DNA of 64,000 nt from Haliotis cracherodii (taxonomy: Eukaryota). The notes under the pieces were generated by a model that was not told where the DNA came from, searched no databases, and saw only the letters and a list, made by a program, of their open reading frames with translations. The stretch spans positions 53,816,001-53,880,000 of the forward strand of contig NW_027266308.1 in NCBI RefSeq assembly GCF_022045235.1, read 5' to 3'. Every line of letters starts with the position of its first letter. Position 1 is the stretch's first letter. Of this stretch, positions 19,221 through 28,413 are shown piece by piece. The translations under genes were made by a program, and so were the position numbers.

Positions 19221-20559
19221 TAATTACAATTTTAAGCCATTAGTTAGGCATTGGCATTATCTTGATATGTCAACACCGTATCATGAAATTATACCTTGCA
19301 ATTATTGGTACCTTGCATTTTCAAATTTATAATTTCAAGAAAGCATAAAAATGGTATGGCCCTAATTGGTTTCCGTAGGGACACATCCCTGTCCTATTAA
19401 ATATATTTGACGATACATGTTTGGGGCATATTTCCTTTGTATCTTTTATTAATTTGTTACATTCCCTCTCACTCTCTAAAGTACCAGTTCCACTGAAAGT
19501 AGTCCCTTCATAATTGTACTAGTTGCTGGTGTAAACATATGCCTTGTGTCTCGTCACGCGGCATCATGTGTGTAATTATAATGCTGAACGTATTATAATA
19601 TAGATGTTTTTGTCTCCAGAAAACTGTTGGCAAATCTGTAAATGGTCGTTCCATAATATAGAGACTCTGTCGGTTATACTAAAATATAAATAAACACAAC
19701 ATTCGTTGATTACTTTCAAAGAGAGTCTCATGATATCCAGTCATGGGGAAGTACGCTTACTAAAAATAGCACCGTTTCTGGAGAAAGCCAAATTCTTGTT
19801 TCTAGTGGTCAGTATTGATACAAAGGACTTGTAAGAACTAGTCTGCCAGGGTATGTCAAGGTAAGTGTGTTAATTATGTCTCTTGACCGCTGAATTTATT
19901 TCTCGATCACCTCCCAGGCAACGAAGCATCGCTCAAATAGTTACATCAGTACGGCTGTGGGATCGCGCATTGATCCGGACTGTCCACGTCGATGTTAGCA
20001 TCCGGGGGGCGTTATATGTTGTTAACATGTATCGTGTGAAAGTTCGTCATCTCATGAAGCTCTGTAAGTTTGAATTGTTGTACCATGTTGGTGGTTTGAC
20101 GATTAGGTATCAATTACATGGTGTTTCTTTGAGGGGACAGAATTACTTCCGGGCAAAGGATGTATACACCCATGTTTGATGGTGTCTAAACATGAAACAA
20201 AACAAGAAATGGTTATTCGATGATGATGTGTTTGACAGACAGACAGACAGACAGACAGGCAGGCAGACAGAATATTTTATTTTCGTCTCACCCCAGGAAC
20301 AGATAAACAACATATACAACAATATATAACTGAGCCATCCCCTGCAGGATTATGAGAGACGTAATTATTTACACGTACTATTTAGTATAAAATATAATAT
20401 ACACACACGGGTATCACAGATATTTCATGCATCATATCAATGAGTATCCCACAACAGGCGACATGGTCATGACGTCTCAGGGAAGATGGGGTCGCAGTTT
20501 CACACTACACAGTAATGAGCAGGGTCAAGTGTGAAGTTACAAGTCCATGCTTTCATTTG

Positions 20560-22660
20560 TTCGGCAGTGTACATGTTGTTTATTACATTAAGGGGACATA
20601 AAATACATTTTGTTTATCACTTTTAGTGGACATAAAATAAGGCTGTTAGTTACATTTATGAGATATCAAAGAAAGGTTGTGATTTACATTTAGGGGACAT
20701 TAAATAAAGGTTTCAGTTACCTTTAGGAGACATAAAAGTTTAAGTTACATCTGGGAGACATTACATAAAGGTTTTAGTTACATTTAGGGGTCATTAAATA
20801 AAGGTTTCAGTTACATTTAGGAGACATTAGATAAAGGTTTTACTTACATTTGGGGGAAATAAATAAAGGTTTTAGTTACATTTAGGAGTCATTAAATAAA
20901 GGTTTCAGTTACATTTAGAAGACATTAAATAAAGGTTTTACTTACATTTGGGAGAAATAAATAAAGGTTTTAGTTACATTAAGGAGACTTTAAATAAAGG
21001 TTTTACTTACATTAGGAGAAATAAATAAAGGTTTTAGTTATATTTAGGAGACATTAAATAAAGGTTTTAGTTACATTTAGGAGATATTTGATAAAGATTA
21101 TGATTTATTACGGGACATTGAATAAATGTTTCAGTTACATTTAGGAGACATTAAATAAAGGTTTTAGTTTCATTTAGGAGACATTAGATAAAGGTTTTAA
21201 TAACATTTAGGAGACATTAAATAAATGTTTTAGTTATATTTAGGAGACATTAAATAAAGGTTTGAGTTACATTTAGGAGACATTAAATAAAGATTGTGAT
21301 TTAGTAGGGGACATAAAATAAAGGTTTTAGTTACATTTGGGAGACATTAAATAACGGTTTTACTTACATTTAGGAGTCATTAAATAAAGGTTTCAGTTAC
21401 ATTAAGGAGACATTAAATAAAGGTTATAGTTACATTTAGGAGACATTAAATAAAGGTTTTACTTACATTTGGGAGAAATAAATTAAGGTTTTAGTTACAT
21501 TCAGGAGACATAAAATATGGGTTTTACTTACATTTAGGAGACATTTGATAAAGATTGTAATTTATTAGGGGACATTAAATAAATGTTTTAGTTACATTTA
21601 GGAGACACTTAATAAATGTTTTAGTTACATTTAGGAGACATTAAAAAAAGGTTTTACTTACATTTGGGAGAAATAAATAAAGGTTTTACTTACATTTAGG
21701 AGACATTAAATAAAGGTTTTAGTAACATTAGGAGAAATATATTAGGTTTTAGTTACATTTAGGAGACTTTAAATAAAGGTTTTAGTTTCATTTAGGAGAC
21801 ATTTAATAAAGGTTTTACTTACATTAGGAGAAATAAATAAAGGTTTTAGTTACACTTAGGAGACTTTTGATAAATGTTTTAGTTACATTTAGGAGACATT
21901 AAATAAAGGTTTTAATTACATTTAGGAGACATTAAATAAAGGTTTTAGTTACATTTAGGAGTCATTAAATAAAGATTGTGATTTATTAGGGACATAAAAT
22001 AAAGGTTTTAGTTACATTTAGGAGACATTAAATAAAGGTTTTAGTTACATTTAGGAGTCATTAAATAAAGGTTTCAGTTACATTTAGGAGACATTAGATA
22101 AAGATTTTAGTTTCATTTAGGAGACATTAAATAAATGTTTTAGTTACATTTAGGAGACATTAAATAAAGGTTTTACTTTCATTTGGGAGAAATAAATAAA
22201 GGTTTTACTTACATTTAGGAGACATTTGATAAAGATTGTAATTTATTAGGGGACATTAAATAAATGTTTTAATTACATTTAGGAGGCATTAAATAGAGGT
22301 TTTAGTTACATTTAGGAGACATTAAATAAAGGTTAGAGTTACATTTAGGAAACATTAAATAAAGGTTTGAGTTACATTTAGGAGACATTAAATAAAGATC
22401 GTGATTTATTAGGGGACATTAAATAAAGGTTTTACTTACATTTAGGGGTCACTGAATAAAGGTTTTAGTTACATTTTGGAGACATTAAAAAAAGGTTTCA
22501 GTTACATTTCAGAGACATAACATACATGTTGTTGGTCACATTTCGGGGACAAAAAAAGCTGATAGTTACATTTAAAAGAAATACAGTTTTTTAGCTACAT
22601 CTAGGAAACATAAAATACATGTTGTTCGTTACATTTAAGAGACATTAAATAAAGGCTCAG
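20560..22660. repeat. 33-bp satellite array (ttacatttaggagacattaaataaaggttttag), ~2.1 kb
   Basis: About 60 tandem copies, degenerate at both edges. Confidence 0.97.
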
Positions 22661-23228
22661 TAGTCAGTAGTAATGTTAACAGGCATGGCATGTGAGTTTA
22701 CAAAAAATATATAAAGGTTTCTATGTTCTGTTAACTTCGGATGTCAACTGGGAGTGAGTTCCATAGTAGTGGGGATGTCTTTCCCAGCATCTGTCACCAA
22801 GTGATGGGCATGATGAGAGTATTGTAAGTAAATGCTCACCAACGGACAACAAGGCTCGCGTAGGATAAACTCATGTTGTAAATATTAAGGAAAGTAATAA
22901 ACAGTCCAATGACTGACATCATGAGCATCTATCCACGCAATAACATGCATCTACAAAGTCAGAGAGCCTGACCACCCGATCCTGTTTGTCGCCTCTTGCG
23001 ACAAGCATGGTCGCCTTTTACCGGAAGTATGGGTTGCTGAAGACCTATTCTACCCTGGATCTTCACGGATCGCGATTTTAAGGAACTTTTGGGGACAATA
23101 TACATATTGCTATTGTTACATTGTGGGGACATAAACATGACAGTTCAGTTGTAGGGCCAGGTTACTCTGACTGAATGGGTGAGTGAATGTTTTACTCTCA
23201 TTCAGCAATATAACAATTATGTCACGGT

Positions 23229-23470
23229 GAGGTGGCACGGGTGGTCCAGTCGTCTTAGGCGCCGTCATTCGCTGTGCAGAGTTGCGTCCCTTGGGGACAC
23301 CAGAAACCGAAGATTGTGGGTTTCGAATCCCGGTTCGCCCGGTGATCATCATACCTGTGCTCACCAAGTGGTAAACGTCTGTGACCTGCATAACATCGGA
23401 CTTTCCTCCCACATAAAGCTGACACGCGGTGACATTACTGGAATACTGTACAAACCCAACTCACTCACTC
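23229..23470 (+). mobile_element. tRNA-derived SINE family D copy; others at about 28990-29258(-), 7688-7870(-, partial), 28690-28770(-, partial)
   Basis: ggcacgggtggtccagt A-box-like, gtttcgaatcc B box, shared body aagtggtaaacgtctg.gacctgc, tail actcactcac. Confidence 0.8.
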
Positions 23471-23646
23471 AATCGTTATGTCACATGTCTGGGTCTGGGT
23501 ACCATGACAAACAATCAGACAAGTCATCTTCTAAATGTACAGATGTACTGGGTGTCTATTCTGACTAGGAATCTTCAAGAGATCGATATACTTCAAACAA
23601 CAATGACTTAAAACCATACGAGCCTATCAACTTATGGAGACAAATA

Positions 23647-23797
23647 CAGTAAACTACGTTTATAACGAACTGACGGATATAACGAACTTATTTTTTAGTC
23701 CCGGCCATTTGATGTATATATGCTGTTTATATGTTTATAACGAACTACGGTTATTACGAACTGGTCCCTTTGAGTTCGTTATAACCGTAGTTTACTG
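23647..23797. mobile_element. Short TA-flanked MITE (CAGT termini)
   Basis: TA|cagtaaactacgtttataacgaac ... gttcgttataaccgtagtttactg|TA. Confidence 0.85.
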
Positions 23798-24335
23798 TAA
23801 AGAAATCATACCTAAGTAGTTCATCACTTTGGTGAAACCCAAACGCACTGGTATCACCTTGTCAGACAAAGAATCATCAGTGGGATGAATCTAGGATTTG
23901 AACGCCCAACTAGTAGCTGTTGATCTGGCAACTAAGGGAGACAACCCTGCGCAAAGAGTTGATGCTTCTTGGACCACTGGCTACCTATTCGAGCTAGGAT
24001 CTCCACCATGTATACATGGCCTTGAGGTGTATATATGTGTGGTCTGTGTTCAGAGATCATTACCTGTCACTTTGTACTGGTCCCTCCATGTTCACCACAT
24101 GACATTGTCTGAAAACAAACACAAAACCATGCAACATTCACATGCATCTGTGTCATATAACGCAGTATGCATATTTTGTATGTAATAGGGATACCAATAG
24201 TAGTGTGCAGCTGCAGTCCTAAGTTTAGACTTTCTATAGAGTAAAATATTTCGTGTGTAGTAACATATTTGTTCATTGCTTGAATACATGATTGAAATTC
24301 CATGTTAATATGCATGTTTTCCTTTATAATACAGT

Positions 24336-25877
24336 ATGGCAGATCCAACTCTTAACGCCCTGGTGAATAGCGTGTCCAGTCACCTTGAACCACGCGAAGT
24401 AATGGATTATTTATATCAGGAACATGCGCTCAGCGAGGAGGACATGGACTTGGTCAATGTGAAGGTCACACGTAAAGATAGATGTCGTCTGCTGGTGGAG
24501 AGACTGACTTTCAGGGACAACAAGGTCAAGGCCTTGAAAACATTTGTGGACAGCTTGAGGTCGGATTATAGTTTCTTGGTGTCACCGGTTGCTGCTTGCG
24601 TCAAATCTGTTATTTCGTCAATCCATGAGACTGCTGCCATCCAAACACGCTCAGTTTCAGTGGTTGTCCCCATCCGTGATAGTTCCACTGACTCAGACGA
24701 GGAAAACTCATTTACAAACAGGCGACAAGCAAAAACAAAGGGAATTATTGCGCGCCCGTTACCGAAATCGGGAGTAATCATAGACAGGAGAGTCCATCGT
24801 GTATTCAACATCCTGAGTAACTCTCTCAACAAGGGAGACTACTCGCAATTTCGCGACAATTCCCAGAAACTGATGTCGTGTTGTCGATGTCCGGCAGACG
24901 TGCGATGCACTGTCCTCTACCTACAGTGTTGTCAGTCCTTGTTTCAGAACGACCTGAGTCAAACTAAATTGTTGTGTCAAGAAGCATCAAAGTTGTTACA
25001 ACATACCAGCAACCCCCTCGGATTCTCTGTGGACATTCTTTCCAAAAAAGCGTGGAGATATTTTAAACTTAACAAACTGAGTAAGTTAGAGAGTTGTCTT
25101 CGAGACGCCATGCAGCTGATTCATCAAGATCCACTAAGTTGCTCCGGGAAAGCGGCAGGGTGGATATTTGTTGATCATGCAAGACTATTGACATCTATCC
25201 TCGAAGTAGCTAGTCCACGTCGAAGTCACAATCTTAGACAACAAGCGCTCCGCAGTTTGGAGGAAGCAATAGAACACTTCAAAAGAGAAAACAGCAATGA
25301 TGGACTCTTTGGGCAATCTCTTGCCTTCGTTAAGTATGCCTCACTTCTTCTCCAATGTGGGGAGAGTATGCAGTTTTCTGGGCTGAACCTCAATTCATTA
25401 AGTGTGGAAAAAGCCAAGGATGTTTTGCGGATTGTTGAAGAATCGGAAATTGGCGTCCCTGAGATTCTTCGAGTGACGTACTACACAGCAATGTCGGACC
25501 TTCGTTACCGCCAGCAGAACGTCCAGCGGGCTCTAGAGTACGCTGCAGACGCCTCGGAACTGTCGGGAAGACTTGGAATGTGCGAGGAGCAAAGAAACGC
25601 AGGCACGAGGGTAGACTTCTACCAAGCACGAAGAAGTAAAGAACAAATTACCTTAATTAAGGCAGATATCGAGGCAATGTGGGCAGAGAGTGCCAGAGAA
25701 ACAGACGCAGACGACACATGTGTACCGGTTTCAGAAACAAAGAAGGTCGGATCGGATAAGCGATGTAAGAAAAGTAACTGGATAAGGGAGGTTATGTTGT
25801 GGGTGCGCTTTGTGGCTCTACTTTTGTGCATCATGGTGGGGTTTGTCGCGCCACTTACGCTCAAAGATGTGCAGTAG
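24336..25877 (+). CDS. CARD-domain protein with TPR-like helical region and C-terminal transmembrane (tail) anchor, 513 aa, encoded on one large exon
   Basis: Uninterrupted 1542-nt ORF in AT-rich DNA. Residues ~5-85 fit the CARD pattern (LEPREVMDYLYQEHALSEEDMDLV..KVTRKDRCRLLVERL....KALKTFVDSL..DYSFL). Amphipathic TPR-like helices at ~150-435. Hydrophobic VMLWVRFVALLLCIMVGFVAPL near the C-terminus, preceded by basic residues. Splice acceptor tttcctttataatacag|T directly before the ATG. Confidence 0.85.
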   Translation: MADPTLNALVNSVSSHLEPREVMDYLYQEHALSEEDMDLVNVKVTRKDRCRLLVERLTFRDNKVKALKTFVDSLRSDYSFLVSPVAACVKSVISSIHETAAIQTRSVSVVVPIRDSSTDSDEENSFTNRRQAKTKGIIARPLPKSGVIIDRRVHRVFNILSNSLNKGDYSQFRDNSQKLMSCCRCPADVRCTVLYLQCCQSLFQNDLSQTKLLCQEASKLLQHTSNPLGFSVDILSKKAWRYFKLNKLSKLESCLRDAMQLIHQDPLSCSGKAAGWIFVDHARLLTSILEVASPRRSHNLRQQALRSLEEAIEHFKRENSNDGLFGQSLAFVKYASLLLQCGESMQFSGLNLNSLSVEKAKDVLRIVEESEIGVPEILRVTYYTAMSDLRYRQQNVQRALEYAADASELSGRLGMCEEQRNAGTRVDFYQARRSKEQITLIKADIEAMWAESARETDADDTCVPVSETKKVGSDKRCKKSNWIREVMLWVRFVALLLCIMVGFVAPLTLKDVQ

Positions 25878-28252
25878 GATCCATGACAACATTTTGATCT
25901 ACGTGCGTTGTGTAACTTGTAAATTGGGTCACTTGTAATGAAATTATGTCAAACACAAAGAGTCTACAGTTTTCAAAAGAAACCAGACACTCTGTTTTAA
26001 CCAATAGGTGAATACTACTAGTCTGCTGGTTAGAAACGATGTTGCAAAAGAAGCAGTGCTCAATACGTCTTCTGTGGAAATCTCGTTTAAGGTTTGTCAT
26101 CAAAGTGTTTCAGTCTTTAACTTTCGTATAAAATGACATAAGCGAACAATGTCTCTACTTGTTGGGGCTTTCCAGCCTTATACGGGTGGCAGCATGGTAG
26201 AGAGTAGTACACAATTATCATCAAAAGCAGGGAATTGTATGGTGAGGGATAAAAGGGGCATGTGAGGCTACTTACTATCGGTCATTTACTGGACAACAAT
26301 TATGGTTAACAAAACGTCCGTTGTGCGGTGCTTGGTAATGTTTTGCATACCGTTTAATGCGGATCTCAAGGAGATGTTGAATTACATGTTTAAATGTATG
26401 TGATTAGGCGTGACGAGTTATGTCGACCAACAATCTTGACTCGATTTAGTCACGAATGAAATCTTTATTAAGCCCATTGCTGAATATATTATACACACCT
26501 GGAAAAACGTTAAGCACCCCCTCCTGTTGTAGCTATGAGTTTTGAAACCTGTTCCCTGACCCCAAATCTTTGGCATACAAAGCAGAACATTTCATTGGGT
26601 GTATTATTGGCAAAATTGGTACGCGATTTAAGTATGGAGCTGGAGGGTTCCCTATATTGTTATGGCTGGTAAGATGCTAACTACAAATGACCAATATGGC
26701 TTGAACAGGACTGTGTAACTACCACTTGCCCTGATAACTGCTTGAACATTCTCCACATAACCCCAGTGACTGATGCGTTCCTGGGGTAGGTTTTCCCATT
26801 CTCAGTGCAATAATGCTTGTGACAATTCCTGTAGTTTGACTACTGTTGGGTCCAGGTTTGCGCGACAGTGATCATCTTTGTCATGGGGCACTAACTTCTT
26901 CCCACGTGTATCCATGACGGACTACTTGGGGTTTTACACTCTGTTTCAGTATTCAGTTTGTTACTTTAACGCCTATTATCGTTTGGCACATGGATTGTTA
27001 GTTCATATAACATACGTTTTGTTATATCATGTCAATATAGTGCAAAATCATATTTTTGATTGTGTGTATTGTAACACTTCAGCATTTTAGCTGAACACTA
27101 CACTTTACTTTGCAGTGGCGTTAACGAGCCTTTCACTGGGTGGTGCAATATCATCGTTTCAGTTGACTCAAAGAGTACATTTATGTCACAGTAGCCAATA
27201 TGTTTAAAACAAATATCAGATTTTGCTTGGGATGTTCCGGTAATTGCTTAACACACCAAATGGACTAGTAATGACCTGTCGAGATGAATAGTGGCGAAAA
27301 TATGAAAATCCCAAACGTTGAGTATGTATAATAACTCAACGTTGCCCCCTTATAAACCTCAATTTGATGAGGATATTTGAGTTGCAAAATATAGAGCAAG
27401 GAACCTTTTGTTTTGAGCAAATATTTGTTTATGAGGGTTATTCCAGGGTATATGTCCCTTCCAGGGTTGGAACGTTGAGCTGTCTTACATATTGCTTTGC
27501 CTTACAATTCGATAACACTGTTGTTCAAAAAGCAAGGAACTTTCCATACTTTGGTGTACTAAGAACAAATACAGTAGTTATGTGACACTGTAGATTATTA
27601 TGGCTACATTTTAAAGGTGTGGCGAGGCACTAATATAGAGACGTTTGTGCGCGTGCGTGTGCGTGCGTGCGTGCGTGCGTGTGTGCATGCTTTATGCACT
27701 GTTAGTTTTATGGTGCTAGCCCACTGAGATACCAGGCCGCAGTTTAACATAAATACCCCGCTCGGACATAGAATACTCCGATCTCCGACCAGTCCTTGTT
27801 TTTGACCCTTAATGCAGAGCGCCAGACAGGAAAATAACGTACCATTTTTAGCGTCTTTCGGTATGAACCACCGACCATCTCCGGGCGCTATCAACAAGAC
27901 CACAGAGGTGGTCGCTACATAGTCATTGGCTGGATACACCAAACTGAGTGTCTACATGTACTTTGCTCCCTTTGGCGATTGCCCATTCTAAACGGCATTT
28001 TCAAATAAAGTCTTTTCCTATTTGAAAAGTTAATTAATTTCTCACCTTGAAAGAAGAGTCCCTTGTTTGGAGTGATGCTTGTGTCGGGCGGTGTTAAAGC
28101 TGAGAACCGCGTCTTGTGTCCAGTAGGGTTGTTTGTGTAATTACGTTATTACTGTTGTGTTTTTGGAAACAATTGCATGGTCACTTTTCATTTAATTTTT
28201 TCAAATATAGTTTTGAGACTAATAATTGGGGTGCCGGTTTGCTAAAATGGGA

Positions 28253-28413
28253 NNNNNNNNNNNNNNNNNNNNNNNNNNNNNNNNNNNNNNNNNNNNNNNN
28301 NNNNNNNNNNNNNNNNNNNNNNNNNNNNNNNNNNNNNNNNNNNNNNNNNNNNNNNNNNNNNNNNNNNNNNNNNNNNNNNNNNNNNNNNNNNNNNNNNNNN
28401 NNNNNNNNNNNNN
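28253..28413. other. Assembly gap (161 N)
   Basis: Run of N. Confidence 1.

What the first reader, a model, noticed from the sequence alone, without database searches (positions are those of the whole stretch)
24336..25877. Single-exon CARD + TPR-like + tail-anchor protein: a candidate membrane-tethered sensor-adaptor with MAVS-like topology
Seen: an intact 513-aa ORF with a clear N-terminal CARD, an acidic Ser/Asp linker (DSSTDSDEENS), ~280 aa of helical repeats with TPR-like periodicity, then basic residues, ~22 hydrophobic residues and a very short C-tail. Known: N-terminal CARD plus C-terminal tail anchor is the MAVS architecture, and TPR solenoids (e.g. IFIT proteins) bind foreign RNA or peptides. 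I do not recognise CARD-TPR-TM in one chain as a named family. Inference: a lineage-specific innate-immune or cell-death receptor on mitochondria, ER or peroxisomes that fuses ligand sensing to CARD signalling. Asp-rich sites in both linkers (STDSD; RETDADD just before the TM) could allow caspase-type release from the membrane.
Basis: partly seen in the sequence, partly recalled or inferred. Interest (0 to 1): 0.8.

Follow-up and report, generated by a model that had tools for sequence, protein, structure and literature searches.

The report
Tail-anchored CARD–TPR adaptor protein in abalone
This black-abalone gene encodes an expressed, well-folded protein with a death-fold CARD, a TPR-like helical domain and a C-terminal membrane anchor; it belongs to an unnamed family found in molluscs, brachiopods and annelids and is a testable candidate for the antiviral adaptor (MAVS) reported missing from abalone and other gastropods.

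Summary
ORF 24336-25877 (+), 513 aa, is intact and matches an NCBI 'uncharacterized protein' of Haliotis cracherodii. Transcript contigs from four studies show it is spliced and expressed. Pfam CARD scores above its cut-off, and AlphaFold2 (pLDDT 88) gives a six-helix CARD closest to Apaf-1. This is followed by a disordered acidic linker, a 13-helix TPR-like superhelix (Z 17-21 to TPR proteins), a basic juxtamembrane stretch and a terminal TM helix four residues from the end.

Corrections:
- The CDS has two exons, not one; a 5' exon adds Met-Ser-Arg.
- The protein is not an orphan. The solenoid defines an unnamed family of at least 90 cluster representatives in molluscs, a brachiopod and an annelid.
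- The family has an anchored single-CARD group and a soluble group with acidic tails, most members carrying tandem CARDs.
- This abalone also carries at least four, probably five, divergent paralogues, one of them anchored.

It is not homologous to vertebrate MAVS or oyster MAVS (CARD-Death-TM, ~330 aa) beyond the CARD. [quoted passage not shown] Two papers report MAVS missing in gastropods, while this genome appears to have CARD-bearing RIG-I-like receptors. A MAVS-like role is therefore possible but unproven, and a caspase-recruiting role is equally plausible.

The parts
23219..23226 (+). Inferred end of the 5' exon: ATG TCA CG followed by the GTGAGG donor. It supplies Met-Ser and two bases of the Arg codon of the annotated 516-aa protein.
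   Evidence: Only match to ATG-TCN-CG|GT in the 14 kb upstream. It reproduces the MSR start of the NCBI protein. The position is inferred and was not seen in reads, because it lies inside a high-copy repeat.
23227..24334 (+). Intron of about 1.1 kb, ending in the polypyrimidine tract ttttcctttataatacag.
   Evidence: Sequence read. Contigs of four runs stop matching the genome exactly here.
24335..25877 (+). Main coding exon part. The ORF ATG is at 24336 and the stop TAG at 25875-25877.
24345..24650 (+). CARD (death fold), six helices; ORF residues 4-105.
   Evidence: Pfam CARD 37.7 bits. AF2 pLDDT above 94 for most of it. Foldseek: Apaf-1 CARD TMt 0.73-0.78. Profile against PDB: Apaf-1 at 3e-12.
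24651..24785 (+). Disordered linker 1 holding the acidic Ser/Asp run DSSTDSDEENS (24678-24710).
   Evidence: pLDDT 37-51. 62% identity to H. rubra against 85-90% in the folded domains.
24786..25700 (+). Conserved TPR-like alpha-solenoid of 13 helices (ORF residues 151-455). This is the family-defining domain.
   Evidence: AF2 pLDDT mostly 89-98. VIA Z 17-21 to APPBP2, APC/C, TSK and MalT domain III. Shared by at least 90 cluster representatives. 90% identity to H. rubra. 4 synonymous and 1 non-synonymous change in related transcripts.
25701..25790 (+). Disordered linker 2 and the basic juxtamembrane cluster KRCKKSNWIRE (25758-25790).
   Evidence: pLDDT 44-50. Flank charge +3.
25791..25862 (+). 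C-terminal transmembrane segment VMLWVRFVALLLCIMVGFVAPLTL (ORF residues 486-509), followed by the 4-residue tail KDVQ (25863-25874).
   Evidence: Kyte-Doolittle maximum 2.56. AF2 helix. An equivalent segment is present in all anchored relatives.
25878..28025 (+). 3' UTR of about 2.1 kb; the only AATAAA is at 28004.
   Evidence: Contigs are colinear to beyond 27400, with 290-350 more letters. Poly(A) signal scan. The end point is inferred.

Best explanation
The gene encodes a tail-anchored, cytosol-facing signalling scaffold. It is an anchored member of an unnamed lophotrochozoan family defined by one or two N-terminal CARDs followed by a conserved ~305-residue TPR-like solenoid. The proposed mechanism is as follows. 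The C-terminal helix is inserted post-translationally into an organelle membrane, so the rest of the protein sits on the cytosolic face. The CARD is joined by a flexible acidic linker and engages another CARD protein through homotypic, nucleated CARD-CARD assembly. The solenoid is the most conserved part. It acts as a protein- or peptide-binding platform that recruits or holds a partner, or that keeps the CARD in check until a partner binds. Anchoring on a membrane surface concentrates the molecules, and that favours polymerisation. This is how MAVS works in topology and logic, but it is built from different parts. Shown here: the gene, its splicing and expression, the three modules, their conservation, and the family. 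Inferred: membrane insertion, the CARD partner, the solenoid's ligand, and an immune or cell-death role.
For: The CARD is confirmed by Pfam, by fold prediction and by fold search. The solenoid is predicted with high confidence and is TPR-like. Its length is fixed at 286-321 residues in 51 relatives. The C-terminal hydrophobic segment with a mostly basic flank recurs in every member of the anchored group even though its sequence is not conserved. On the solenoid tree, all anchored members, including Haliotis, chiton and Capitella, fall in one group (SH-aLRT 87), and label shuffles never cluster as tightly (0 of 500). The folded domains are 85-90% identical between two Haliotis species against 49-62% for the linkers and TM, and substitutions in the solenoid are mostly synonymous. 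Spliced transcripts are present in four runs from four studies. The same genome carries at least four, probably five, divergent CARD-solenoid paralogues, which are possible partners: hhalign 99.3%, E 3e-20 for one of them, and one is itself anchored.
Against: No experiment and no interaction data exist for any family member. No TM-prediction program was available; the anchor rests on hydropathy and a predicted helix. The TM contains an Arg. TPR-like folds are generic, so the fold gives no ligand. An immune or cell-death role is inferred only from what CARDs do elsewhere. Expression under challenge could not be examined.
Confidence: 0.55

Rival explanations
1. It is the functional substitute for MAVS in abalone. 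CARD-bearing RIG-I-like receptors nucleate its CARD on an organelle surface, and the solenoid replaces the proline-rich or Death region as the recruiter of downstream factors such as TRAF6, TBK1/IKK and IRFs.
For: [quoted passage not shown] BLASTp with human and oyster MAVS found nothing in five abalone proteomes, and the authors say a highly divergent MAVS may have been missed (PMC11103948). The same is reported for Aplysia (PMC9334734). In this genome, CARD_2 hits lie 14-22 kb upstream of RIG-I C-terminal domains on the same strand at three to four loci. So CARD-bearing RLRs probably exist without a known adaptor. RIG-I and MDA5 second CARDs are detectable relatives of the family CARD at about 2.5e-6.
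Against: The CARD does not match the RIG-I/MAVS-type model PF16739 even at E 10. MAVS CARD is not among the 60 PDB sequence hits shown and ranks below Apaf-1, CARMA1, RAIDD and CARD8/9 by structure. There is no proline-rich region (2.5% Pro), no conserved accessible TRAF motif and no pLxIS motif. CARD_2 hits in relatives fall on the extra N-terminal CARD, not the homologous one. I could not test whether the anchored group is absent from taxa that have oyster-type MAVS. RLR gene structures were inferred from colinear hits only.
Confidence: 0.2
2. It is a membrane-bound caspase-activation or cell-death platform. Its Apaf-1/RAIDD-like CARD recruits a CARD-containing initiator caspase to an organelle surface, and the solenoid acts as the regulatory or sensing arm.
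For: By sequence profile and by structure the CARD is closest to Apaf-1, ASC, RAIDD, CED-3, CARD8 and caspase-9. The nearest CARD elsewhere in this genome is a small RAIDD/caspase-like CARD exon on C67. TPR-plus-tail-anchor proteins on mitochondria that regulate death, such as FKBP38, appear among the fold matches.
Against: There is no NTPase oligomerisation domain as in Apaf-1 or CED-4. Similarity between CARDs does not identify binding partners. No caspase partner was identified.
Confidence: 0.2
3. It is a direct receptor. The TPR groove binds a foreign RNA or peptide, and binding releases the CARD.
For: Ligand-sensing TPR modules are among the structural matches: MalT domain III, Rap/NprR/PlcR and the ALPK1 N-terminal domain, and IFIT5. 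The soluble sister group with tandem CARDs resembles RIG-I with the helicase replaced by a solenoid.
Against: The matches fall off smoothly through all kinds of TPR proteins, so none is specific. The solenoid evolves slowly (90% identity between Haliotis species, 4 synonymous and 1 non-synonymous change), unlike most receptors under pathogen pressure. Its best-conserved motifs lie at helix turns and point to a fixed partner.
Confidence: 0.1

Closest known systems
Vertebrate MAVS (IPS-1/VISA/Cardif)
   Same: N-terminal CARD, C-terminal tail anchor, whole protein cytosolic, similar length (about 500-540 aa). It would be expected to signal by CARD polymerisation on a membrane.
   Different: The CARD is not the RIG-I/MAVS subtype. 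The middle region is a folded TPR-like solenoid rather than a disordered proline-rich region with TRAF and pLxIS motifs. From my own knowledge MAVS has a basic C-terminal tail, which this protein lacks. There is no detectable homology outside the CARD.
Bivalve MAVS (CgMAVS of Crassostrea gigas, KY630189; scallop CfMAVS)
   Same: A mollusc CARD protein with a C-terminal TM. Oyster MAVS binds RIG-I CARDs, dimerises through its TM and recruits TRAF6 (PMC5557890).
   Different: CgMAVS is CARD + Death + TM with a CDS of only about 1 kb, roughly 330 aa. It has no room for the solenoid. No Death domain is found here. None of the family members carries the CgMAVS terminal motifs.
CARD19 / BinCARD-2 (from my own knowledge, not tested here)
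   Same: A small vertebrate protein with an N-terminal CARD and a C-terminal TM, located on ER and mitochondria.
   Different: About 230 aa with no TPR domain. No sequence comparison was made here.
TPR proteins anchored on organelle surfaces (Tom70/71, FKBP38, PTPIP51/RMDN3)
   Same: A TPR superhelix held on the cytosolic face by a single TM. Tom70/71 matched by Foldseek and yeast Tom70, PTPIP51 and FKBP38 by VIA. From my own knowledge, Tom70 cooperates with MAVS by docking Hsp90-bound TBK1/IRF3.
   Different: None of them has a CARD. Tom70 and PTPIP51 are N-terminally anchored. The resemblance is at the level of the generic fold only (Z 12.7-14.5).
Apaf-1 / CED-4 and NLR-type STAND proteins
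   Same: An Apaf-1-like CARD joined to a C-terminal repeat domain. MalT domain III, a STAND sensor arm, is a top fold match.
   Different: There is no NB-ARC or NACHT NTPase between the CARD and the repeats. This protein is membrane-anchored.

Membership tests
CARD (Pfam PF00619, death-fold superfamily) | Profile score above the curated cut-off | tested here: met
   37.7 bits against 23.9, E 2e-9, residues 15-84. 41 of 51 relatives also match.
CARD (Pfam PF00619, death-fold superfamily) | Six-helix antiparallel bundle resembling solved CARDs | tested here: met
   Six helices, pLDDT 91 for the CARD-only model. Top Foldseek hits are all death-fold domains, nearly all CARDs. Apaf-1 gives TMt 0.73-0.78 and rmsd 2.4-3.5 A over about 90 residues, though E is only 7e-3 or weaker because the domain is small.
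MAVS | CARD of the RIG-I/MAVS subtype (Pfam PF16739 / IPR031964) | tested here: not met
   No PF16739 match even at E 10. MAVS is not among the 60 PDB profile hits shown. MAVS CARDs rank 25-40 by structure, below Apaf-1, CARMA1, RAIDD and CARD8/9.
MAVS | Proline-rich region with TRAF-binding motifs and a pLxIS motif | tested here: not met
   2.5% proline. No PxQx[ST] and no pLxIS. The only TRAF-like strings lie inside folded helices or are not conserved in H. rubra. The region is a folded solenoid.
MAVS | C-terminal tail anchor | tested here: met
   A single hydrophobic segment ends 4 residues from the C-terminus, and there is no N-terminal signal sequence because the N-terminus is the CARD. 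The target organelle is not testable here.
MAVS | Binds RLR tandem CARDs and forms signalling filaments | not testable with these tools
   Needs binding and assembly assays.
Bivalve MAVS (CgMAVS type) | CARD followed by a Death domain and a TM in about 330 aa | tested here: not met
   No Death domain by Pfam in this protein or in 51 relatives. The model has no second six-helix bundle. The CgMAVS CDS is about 1 kb. A direct alignment was not run, because the CgMAVS sequence is not a stored sequence.
TPR / TPR-like superhelix | Sequence match to a TPR profile | tested here: inconclusive
   TPR_2 at E 0.55, below the cut-off. Single relatives reach E 1e-4 to 8e-4 on TPR_2, TPR_15 and TPR_12.
TPR / TPR-like superhelix | Stack of antiparallel helix hairpins forming a superhelix | tested here: met
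   13 helices. VIA Z 20.8 (APPBP2), 20.1 (APC subunit), 18.7 (TSK) and 17.6 (MalT domain III) over 250-275 residues, above the helical background of about 14. Foldseek gives only TPR proteins and designed helical repeats. Nearly all of the nearest named atlas clusters belong to the TPR clan.
Tail-anchored membrane proteins | One TM within about 30-50 residues of the C-terminus, no signal peptide, bulk of the protein cytosolic | tested here: met
   by sequence only. Insertion and topology were not tested.
STAND / apoptosome-type proteins (Apaf-1, NLR) | NB-ARC or NACHT NTPase domain | tested here: not met
   No such Pfam match. The CARD and solenoid are joined by a 45-residue disordered linker.
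Unnamed lophotrochozoan CARD-solenoid family (defined here) | Conserved ~305-aa solenoid with motifs TSNP, DPxxCxGxAAGW, DGPFG and LLLxCG, preceded by one or two CARDs | tested here: met
   92 representatives at E 1e-3 or better and 39 at 1e-30 or better. Nearly invariant columns are listed.

The most novel reading that the evidence does not exclude
This protein, and the anchored branch of its family, is the long-sought RLR adaptor of gastropods and perhaps other lophotrochozoans that lack an oyster-type MAVS. On this reading it is an independently assembled, non-homologous MAVS analogue in which a TPR-like solenoid replaces the proline-rich or Death region. The soluble CARD-solenoid relatives would be its cognate cytosolic sensors or regulators.
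Probability: 0.2. Interest if true: 0.85.

Novelty: new variant of a known kind. Interest (0 to 1): 0.62.

Why it matters
Abalone suffer lethal herpesvirus (HaHV-1) outbreaks, yet their cytosolic RNA-sensing pathway appears to have receptors without an adaptor. Two genome surveys, one of abalone and one of Aplysia, explicitly leave open whether a divergent MAVS-like protein exists. This gene gives that question a concrete, clonable candidate. More generally, it defines an unnamed domain family, a CARD plus a specific TPR-like solenoid, that is spread across molluscs, a brachiopod and an annelid and comes in membrane-anchored and soluble forms. If the anchored and soluble forms work together, this would be a death-fold signalling system built without a STAND NTPase or a helicase. 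It would also show that the 'CARD on a tail anchor' design arose more than once.

Tried and rejected
- **Oyster-type MAVS orthologue: rejected.** CgMAVS is about 330 aa with a Death domain, and its terminal motifs are absent from all stored family members.
- **MAVS-type CARD: rejected**.
- **Haliotis-only orphan: rejected** by the deep search. The word-index search had found only two Haliotis proteins.
- **Word searches that added little.** The word search with the family profile added nothing. The one with P0007 found only one further unnamed relative (P0108) and one newly named one, Mizuhopecten yessoensis for P0038.
- **Rival MAVS candidates at C45 11.89-11.97 Mb: rejected.** This CARD cluster of about 300-337 aa was examined; the ORFs are CARD plus coiled coil without a TM.
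- **Conserved caspase sites in the linkers: not supported**.
- **Specific structural relative for the solenoid: none found.** Matches are generic TPR.
- **Exon 1 not confirmed from reads.** It lies in a high-copy repeat that swamps the joint table.
- **Model coordinates are not exposed,** so conserved residues could not be mapped onto the groove.
- **Other notes.** The N run at 28253-28413 was left alone.
Full report
**The gene.** The window comes from Haliotis cracherodii (black abalone). The 513-aa ORF at 24336-25877 (+) is 100% identical to a 516-aa NCBI 'uncharacterized protein' of that species and 82% identical to H. rubra LOC124267175. The annotated protein begins MSR before the ORF's first Met. 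Directly upstream of the ORF there is a polypyrimidine tract and an AG acceptor ending at 24334. The only upstream sequence that can supply ATG-TCN-CG plus a GT donor is at 23219-23226. So the CDS has two exons, with all but 8 nt in the second. The position of exon 1 is inferred.

**Expression.** Contigs of four runs from four studies were laid on the region. They carry four organism labels and are about 98.7% identical to the window. Each lies colinear with the genome from exactly 24336 to beyond 27400, and each carries 12-74 further 5' letters that do not match the intron. That boundary at the acceptor shows these are spliced mRNAs, so the gene is expressed in several closely related abalones. 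The only poly(A) signal downstream is at 28004, which gives a 3' UTR of about 2.1 kb. The gene is single-copy at this level of similarity.

**The modules.** Pfam CARD matches residues 15-84 above its curated cut-off. AlphaFold2 run with 51 relatives gives mean pLDDT 88.3 (residue numbers below are those of the 516-aa protein):
- a six-helix bundle at 7-108
- a disordered linker at 109-144, which holds DSSTDSDEENS
- 13 helices at 154-458
- a disordered stretch at about 459-481
- a final helix at 482-515

A CARD-only model (pLDDT 91) retrieves only death-fold domains, nearly all of them CARDs. Apaf-1 is the closest natural protein (TMt 0.73-0.78), and MAVS CARDs come at ranks 25-40 (TMt 0.60-0.67). 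A profile of the family's homologous CARD finds Apaf-1 (3e-12), ASC, RAIDD, BCL10, CED-3, CARD8 and caspase-9. RIG-I and MDA5 second CARDs follow at about 2.5e-6. MAVS is not among the 60 hits shown.

The helical domain has no sequence relative in the PDB. Structurally it is a TPR-type superhelix. Foldseek returns Tom70/71, NprR, LGN, IFIT5 and APPBP2 at E of about 1e-3. VIA-align gives Z 20.8 (APPBP2), 20.1 (APC subunit), 18.7 (TSK) and 17.6 (MalT domain III) over 250-275 residues, then falls smoothly through every kind of TPR protein. Language-model look-alikes are nearly all in the TPR clan. The fold class is therefore settled, but no specific relative emerges.

The C-terminal segment VMLWVRFVALLLCIMVGFVAPLTL has the highest hydropathy in the protein. 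It follows a basic cluster and ends four residues before the stop.

**Conservation.** Between H. cracherodii and H. rubra the CARD is 85% identical and the solenoid 90%. The linkers are 52-62% identical and the TM 49%. Seventeen substitutions are listed in the related-species transcripts: 7 synonymous and 10 non-synonymous. Within the solenoid the split is 4 synonymous to 1 non-synonymous. The folded modules are under constraint. In the anchor, the hydrophobic character is kept rather than the sequence.

**The family.** The exhaustive search found 92 cluster representatives at E 1e-3 or better, of which 39 are at 1e-30 or better. Nearly all match through the solenoid. The members that carry a source organism come from:
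- a chiton, Liolophura sinensis (same CARD-solenoid-anchor layout, aligned over residues 13-441)
- scallops: Pecten, Argopecten and Mizuhopecten
- a freshwater mussel, Sinanodonta
- the brachiopod Lingula
- the annelid Capitella

All are labelled uncharacterized, hypothetical or 'CARD domain-containing'. The solenoid is 286-321 residues long in all 51 aligned members. Its nearly invariant positions sit in motifs such as TSNP, DPxxCxGxAAGW, DGPFG and LLLxCG.

A local CARD HMM shows three architectures:
- one CARD, the solenoid and a C-terminal TM
- two tandem CARDs, the solenoid and a short acidic tail
- a few long proteins with two widely spaced CARDs

On a tree of the solenoid, all anchored members fall in one group that includes Haliotis, chiton and Capitella. 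The other large group is entirely soluble, and nearly all of its members carry tandem CARDs. Each group has SH-aLRT 87, and the anchor label is far more clustered than in shuffles. The anchored form therefore probably predates the mollusc-annelid split.

No Pfam model covers the solenoid. No paper in the library mentions 'CARD-TPR' or the gene identifiers.

**Paralogues in this genome.** A profile search of the H. cracherodii assembly finds further distant members. There are four single-exon ORFs of 493-597 aa clustered on contig C78 (31.03-31.08 Mb) and one of 470 aa on C1. The C1 protein aligns to the family profile across both the CARD and the solenoid, with hhalign probability 99.3%, E 3e-20 and 19% identity. 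Two of the four C78 ORFs pass the Pfam CARD cut-off. One C78 protein (L020, 597 aa) again ends in a strongly hydrophobic segment followed by an acidic tail. So the abalone has two anchored forms and three to four soluble ones.

**Relation to MAVS.** Oyster MAVS was described as CARD + Death + TM. It binds RIG-I CARDs, dimerises through its TM and recruits TRAF6 (PMC5557890). Its cDNA in the paper's supplement has a CDS of only about 1 kb. It cannot contain the solenoid, and none of the stored family members carries its terminal motifs.

A 2024 survey found no BLASTp match to human or oyster MAVS in five abalone proteomes. It concluded that abalone may lack a conventional MAVS and noted that a highly divergent one might have been missed (PMC11103948). 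An Aplysia survey says the same (PMC9334734), and I found no later report.

In this genome, RIG-I/MAVS-type CARD hits lie 14-22 kb upstream of RIG-I C-terminal domains on the same strand. This occurs at C80 near 57.95 and 57.98 Mb and at C3 near 40.43 Mb, and probably also at C3 near 36.04 Mb. CARD-bearing RLRs are therefore likely present, although their gene structures were not verified.

This makes the protein a legitimate candidate for a MAVS-like role, but the defining MAVS features fail:
- There is no PF16739 match.
- There is no closeness to the MAVS CARD.
- There is no proline-rich region, no conserved accessible TRAF motif and no pLxIS motif.
- The CARD_2 matches seen in relatives belong to the extra N-terminal CARD, not the homologous one.

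It is not a member of the MAVS family. Whether it works like MAVS remains open.

**Mechanism.** The best-supported statement is general. This is a cytosol-facing CARD scaffold held on a membrane by a tail anchor. The CARD assembles with another CARD protein, and the conserved solenoid binds a fixed partner. I put this at 0.55.

More specific readings compete:
- An RLR adaptor (0.2), supported by topology and by the gap in the gastropod pathway.
- A caspase-recruiting death platform (0.2), supported by the Apaf-1/RAIDD-like CARD.

The target organelle cannot be decided here. The segment is fairly hydrophobic and has a basic N-terminal flank but an uncharged 4-residue tail. From my own knowledge of tail-anchor targeting rules, that pattern does not clearly indicate mitochondria.

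The caspase-release idea has no comparative support. DADD|T is missing in H. rubra and in the other anchored members.

**Limits.**
The taxon range therefore rests on nine named species.
- No TM predictor, multimer prediction or challenge RNA-seq was available.
- The CgMAVS sequence was read in the paper but not entered into any tool.

Noticed in passing
window 22900-23900: High-copy repeat upstream of the main exon. It covers the inferred exon 1 and part of the intron. Summed contig depth is 1e4-1e5 in all four runs against about 7-21 for the gene, and there are many internal joints, as for a dispersed SINE-like or transposon-derived element present in many transcripts.
   Followed up: no
G000:C78:31027900-31077500 (L017, L020, L018): Cluster of four single-exon CARD-solenoid paralogues of 493-597 aa on both strands. 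One of them (L020 6372..8165 -) has its own C-terminal TM and an acidic tail.
   Followed up: partly
G000:C1:38246700-38248150 (L019 1220..2632 -): Solitary soluble CARD-solenoid paralogue of 470 aa; hhalign 99.3% to the family profile.
   Followed up: partly
G000:C45:11890000-11970000 (L008, L021-L024): Tandem cluster of at least four CARD + long coiled-coil ORFs of about 300-337 aa ending in ...PRNRFQ, resembling CARD9/CARMA, with no TM. It lies on the same contig as the window but 42 Mb away.
   Followed up: partly
G000:C67:35277000-35441200: At least five nearly identical 160-aa open frames with a CARD, several with identical E-values, spread over 165 kb. This looks like a recent tandem amplification of a CARD exon or gene.
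   Followed up: no
G000:C80:57948018-58034961 and G000:C3:35857334-36061493, 40421949-40449787: Two arrays of RIG-I-like receptor genes, seen as CARD_2 hits followed 14-22 kb downstream by RIG-I C-terminal domains. One C-terminal-domain copy on C3 (35857334) carries an in-frame TAA.
   Followed up: partly
family members P0005-P0032 (soluble group): The soluble relatives (mostly tandem-CARD) end in a recurring acidic tail motif of the type ...EEE..RILFEESS..SD. It resembles the acidic Ser/Asp linker of the abalone protein and might be a ligand for the solenoid groove. This is speculation.
   Followed up: no
family members P0046-P0048, P0053, P0055, P0057, P0059: Long relatives of 936-1156 aa have about 500 residues between two CARDs. 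Pfam gave no match there in the five that were scanned (P0046-P0048, P0053, P0055), so this may be another uncharacterised domain.
   Followed up: no
window 20001-22000: A stretch of low G+C (0.30) with strong GC skew (+0.32), unlike the rest of the window. It is probably simple or strand-biased repeat.
   Followed up: no
window 26189-26830: The 3' UTR differs from the related-species transcripts by several small insertions and deletions, for example a 7-nt insertion behind 26432 in three runs and a 3-nt deletion at 26809 in all four. The coding region shows none.
   Followed up: no
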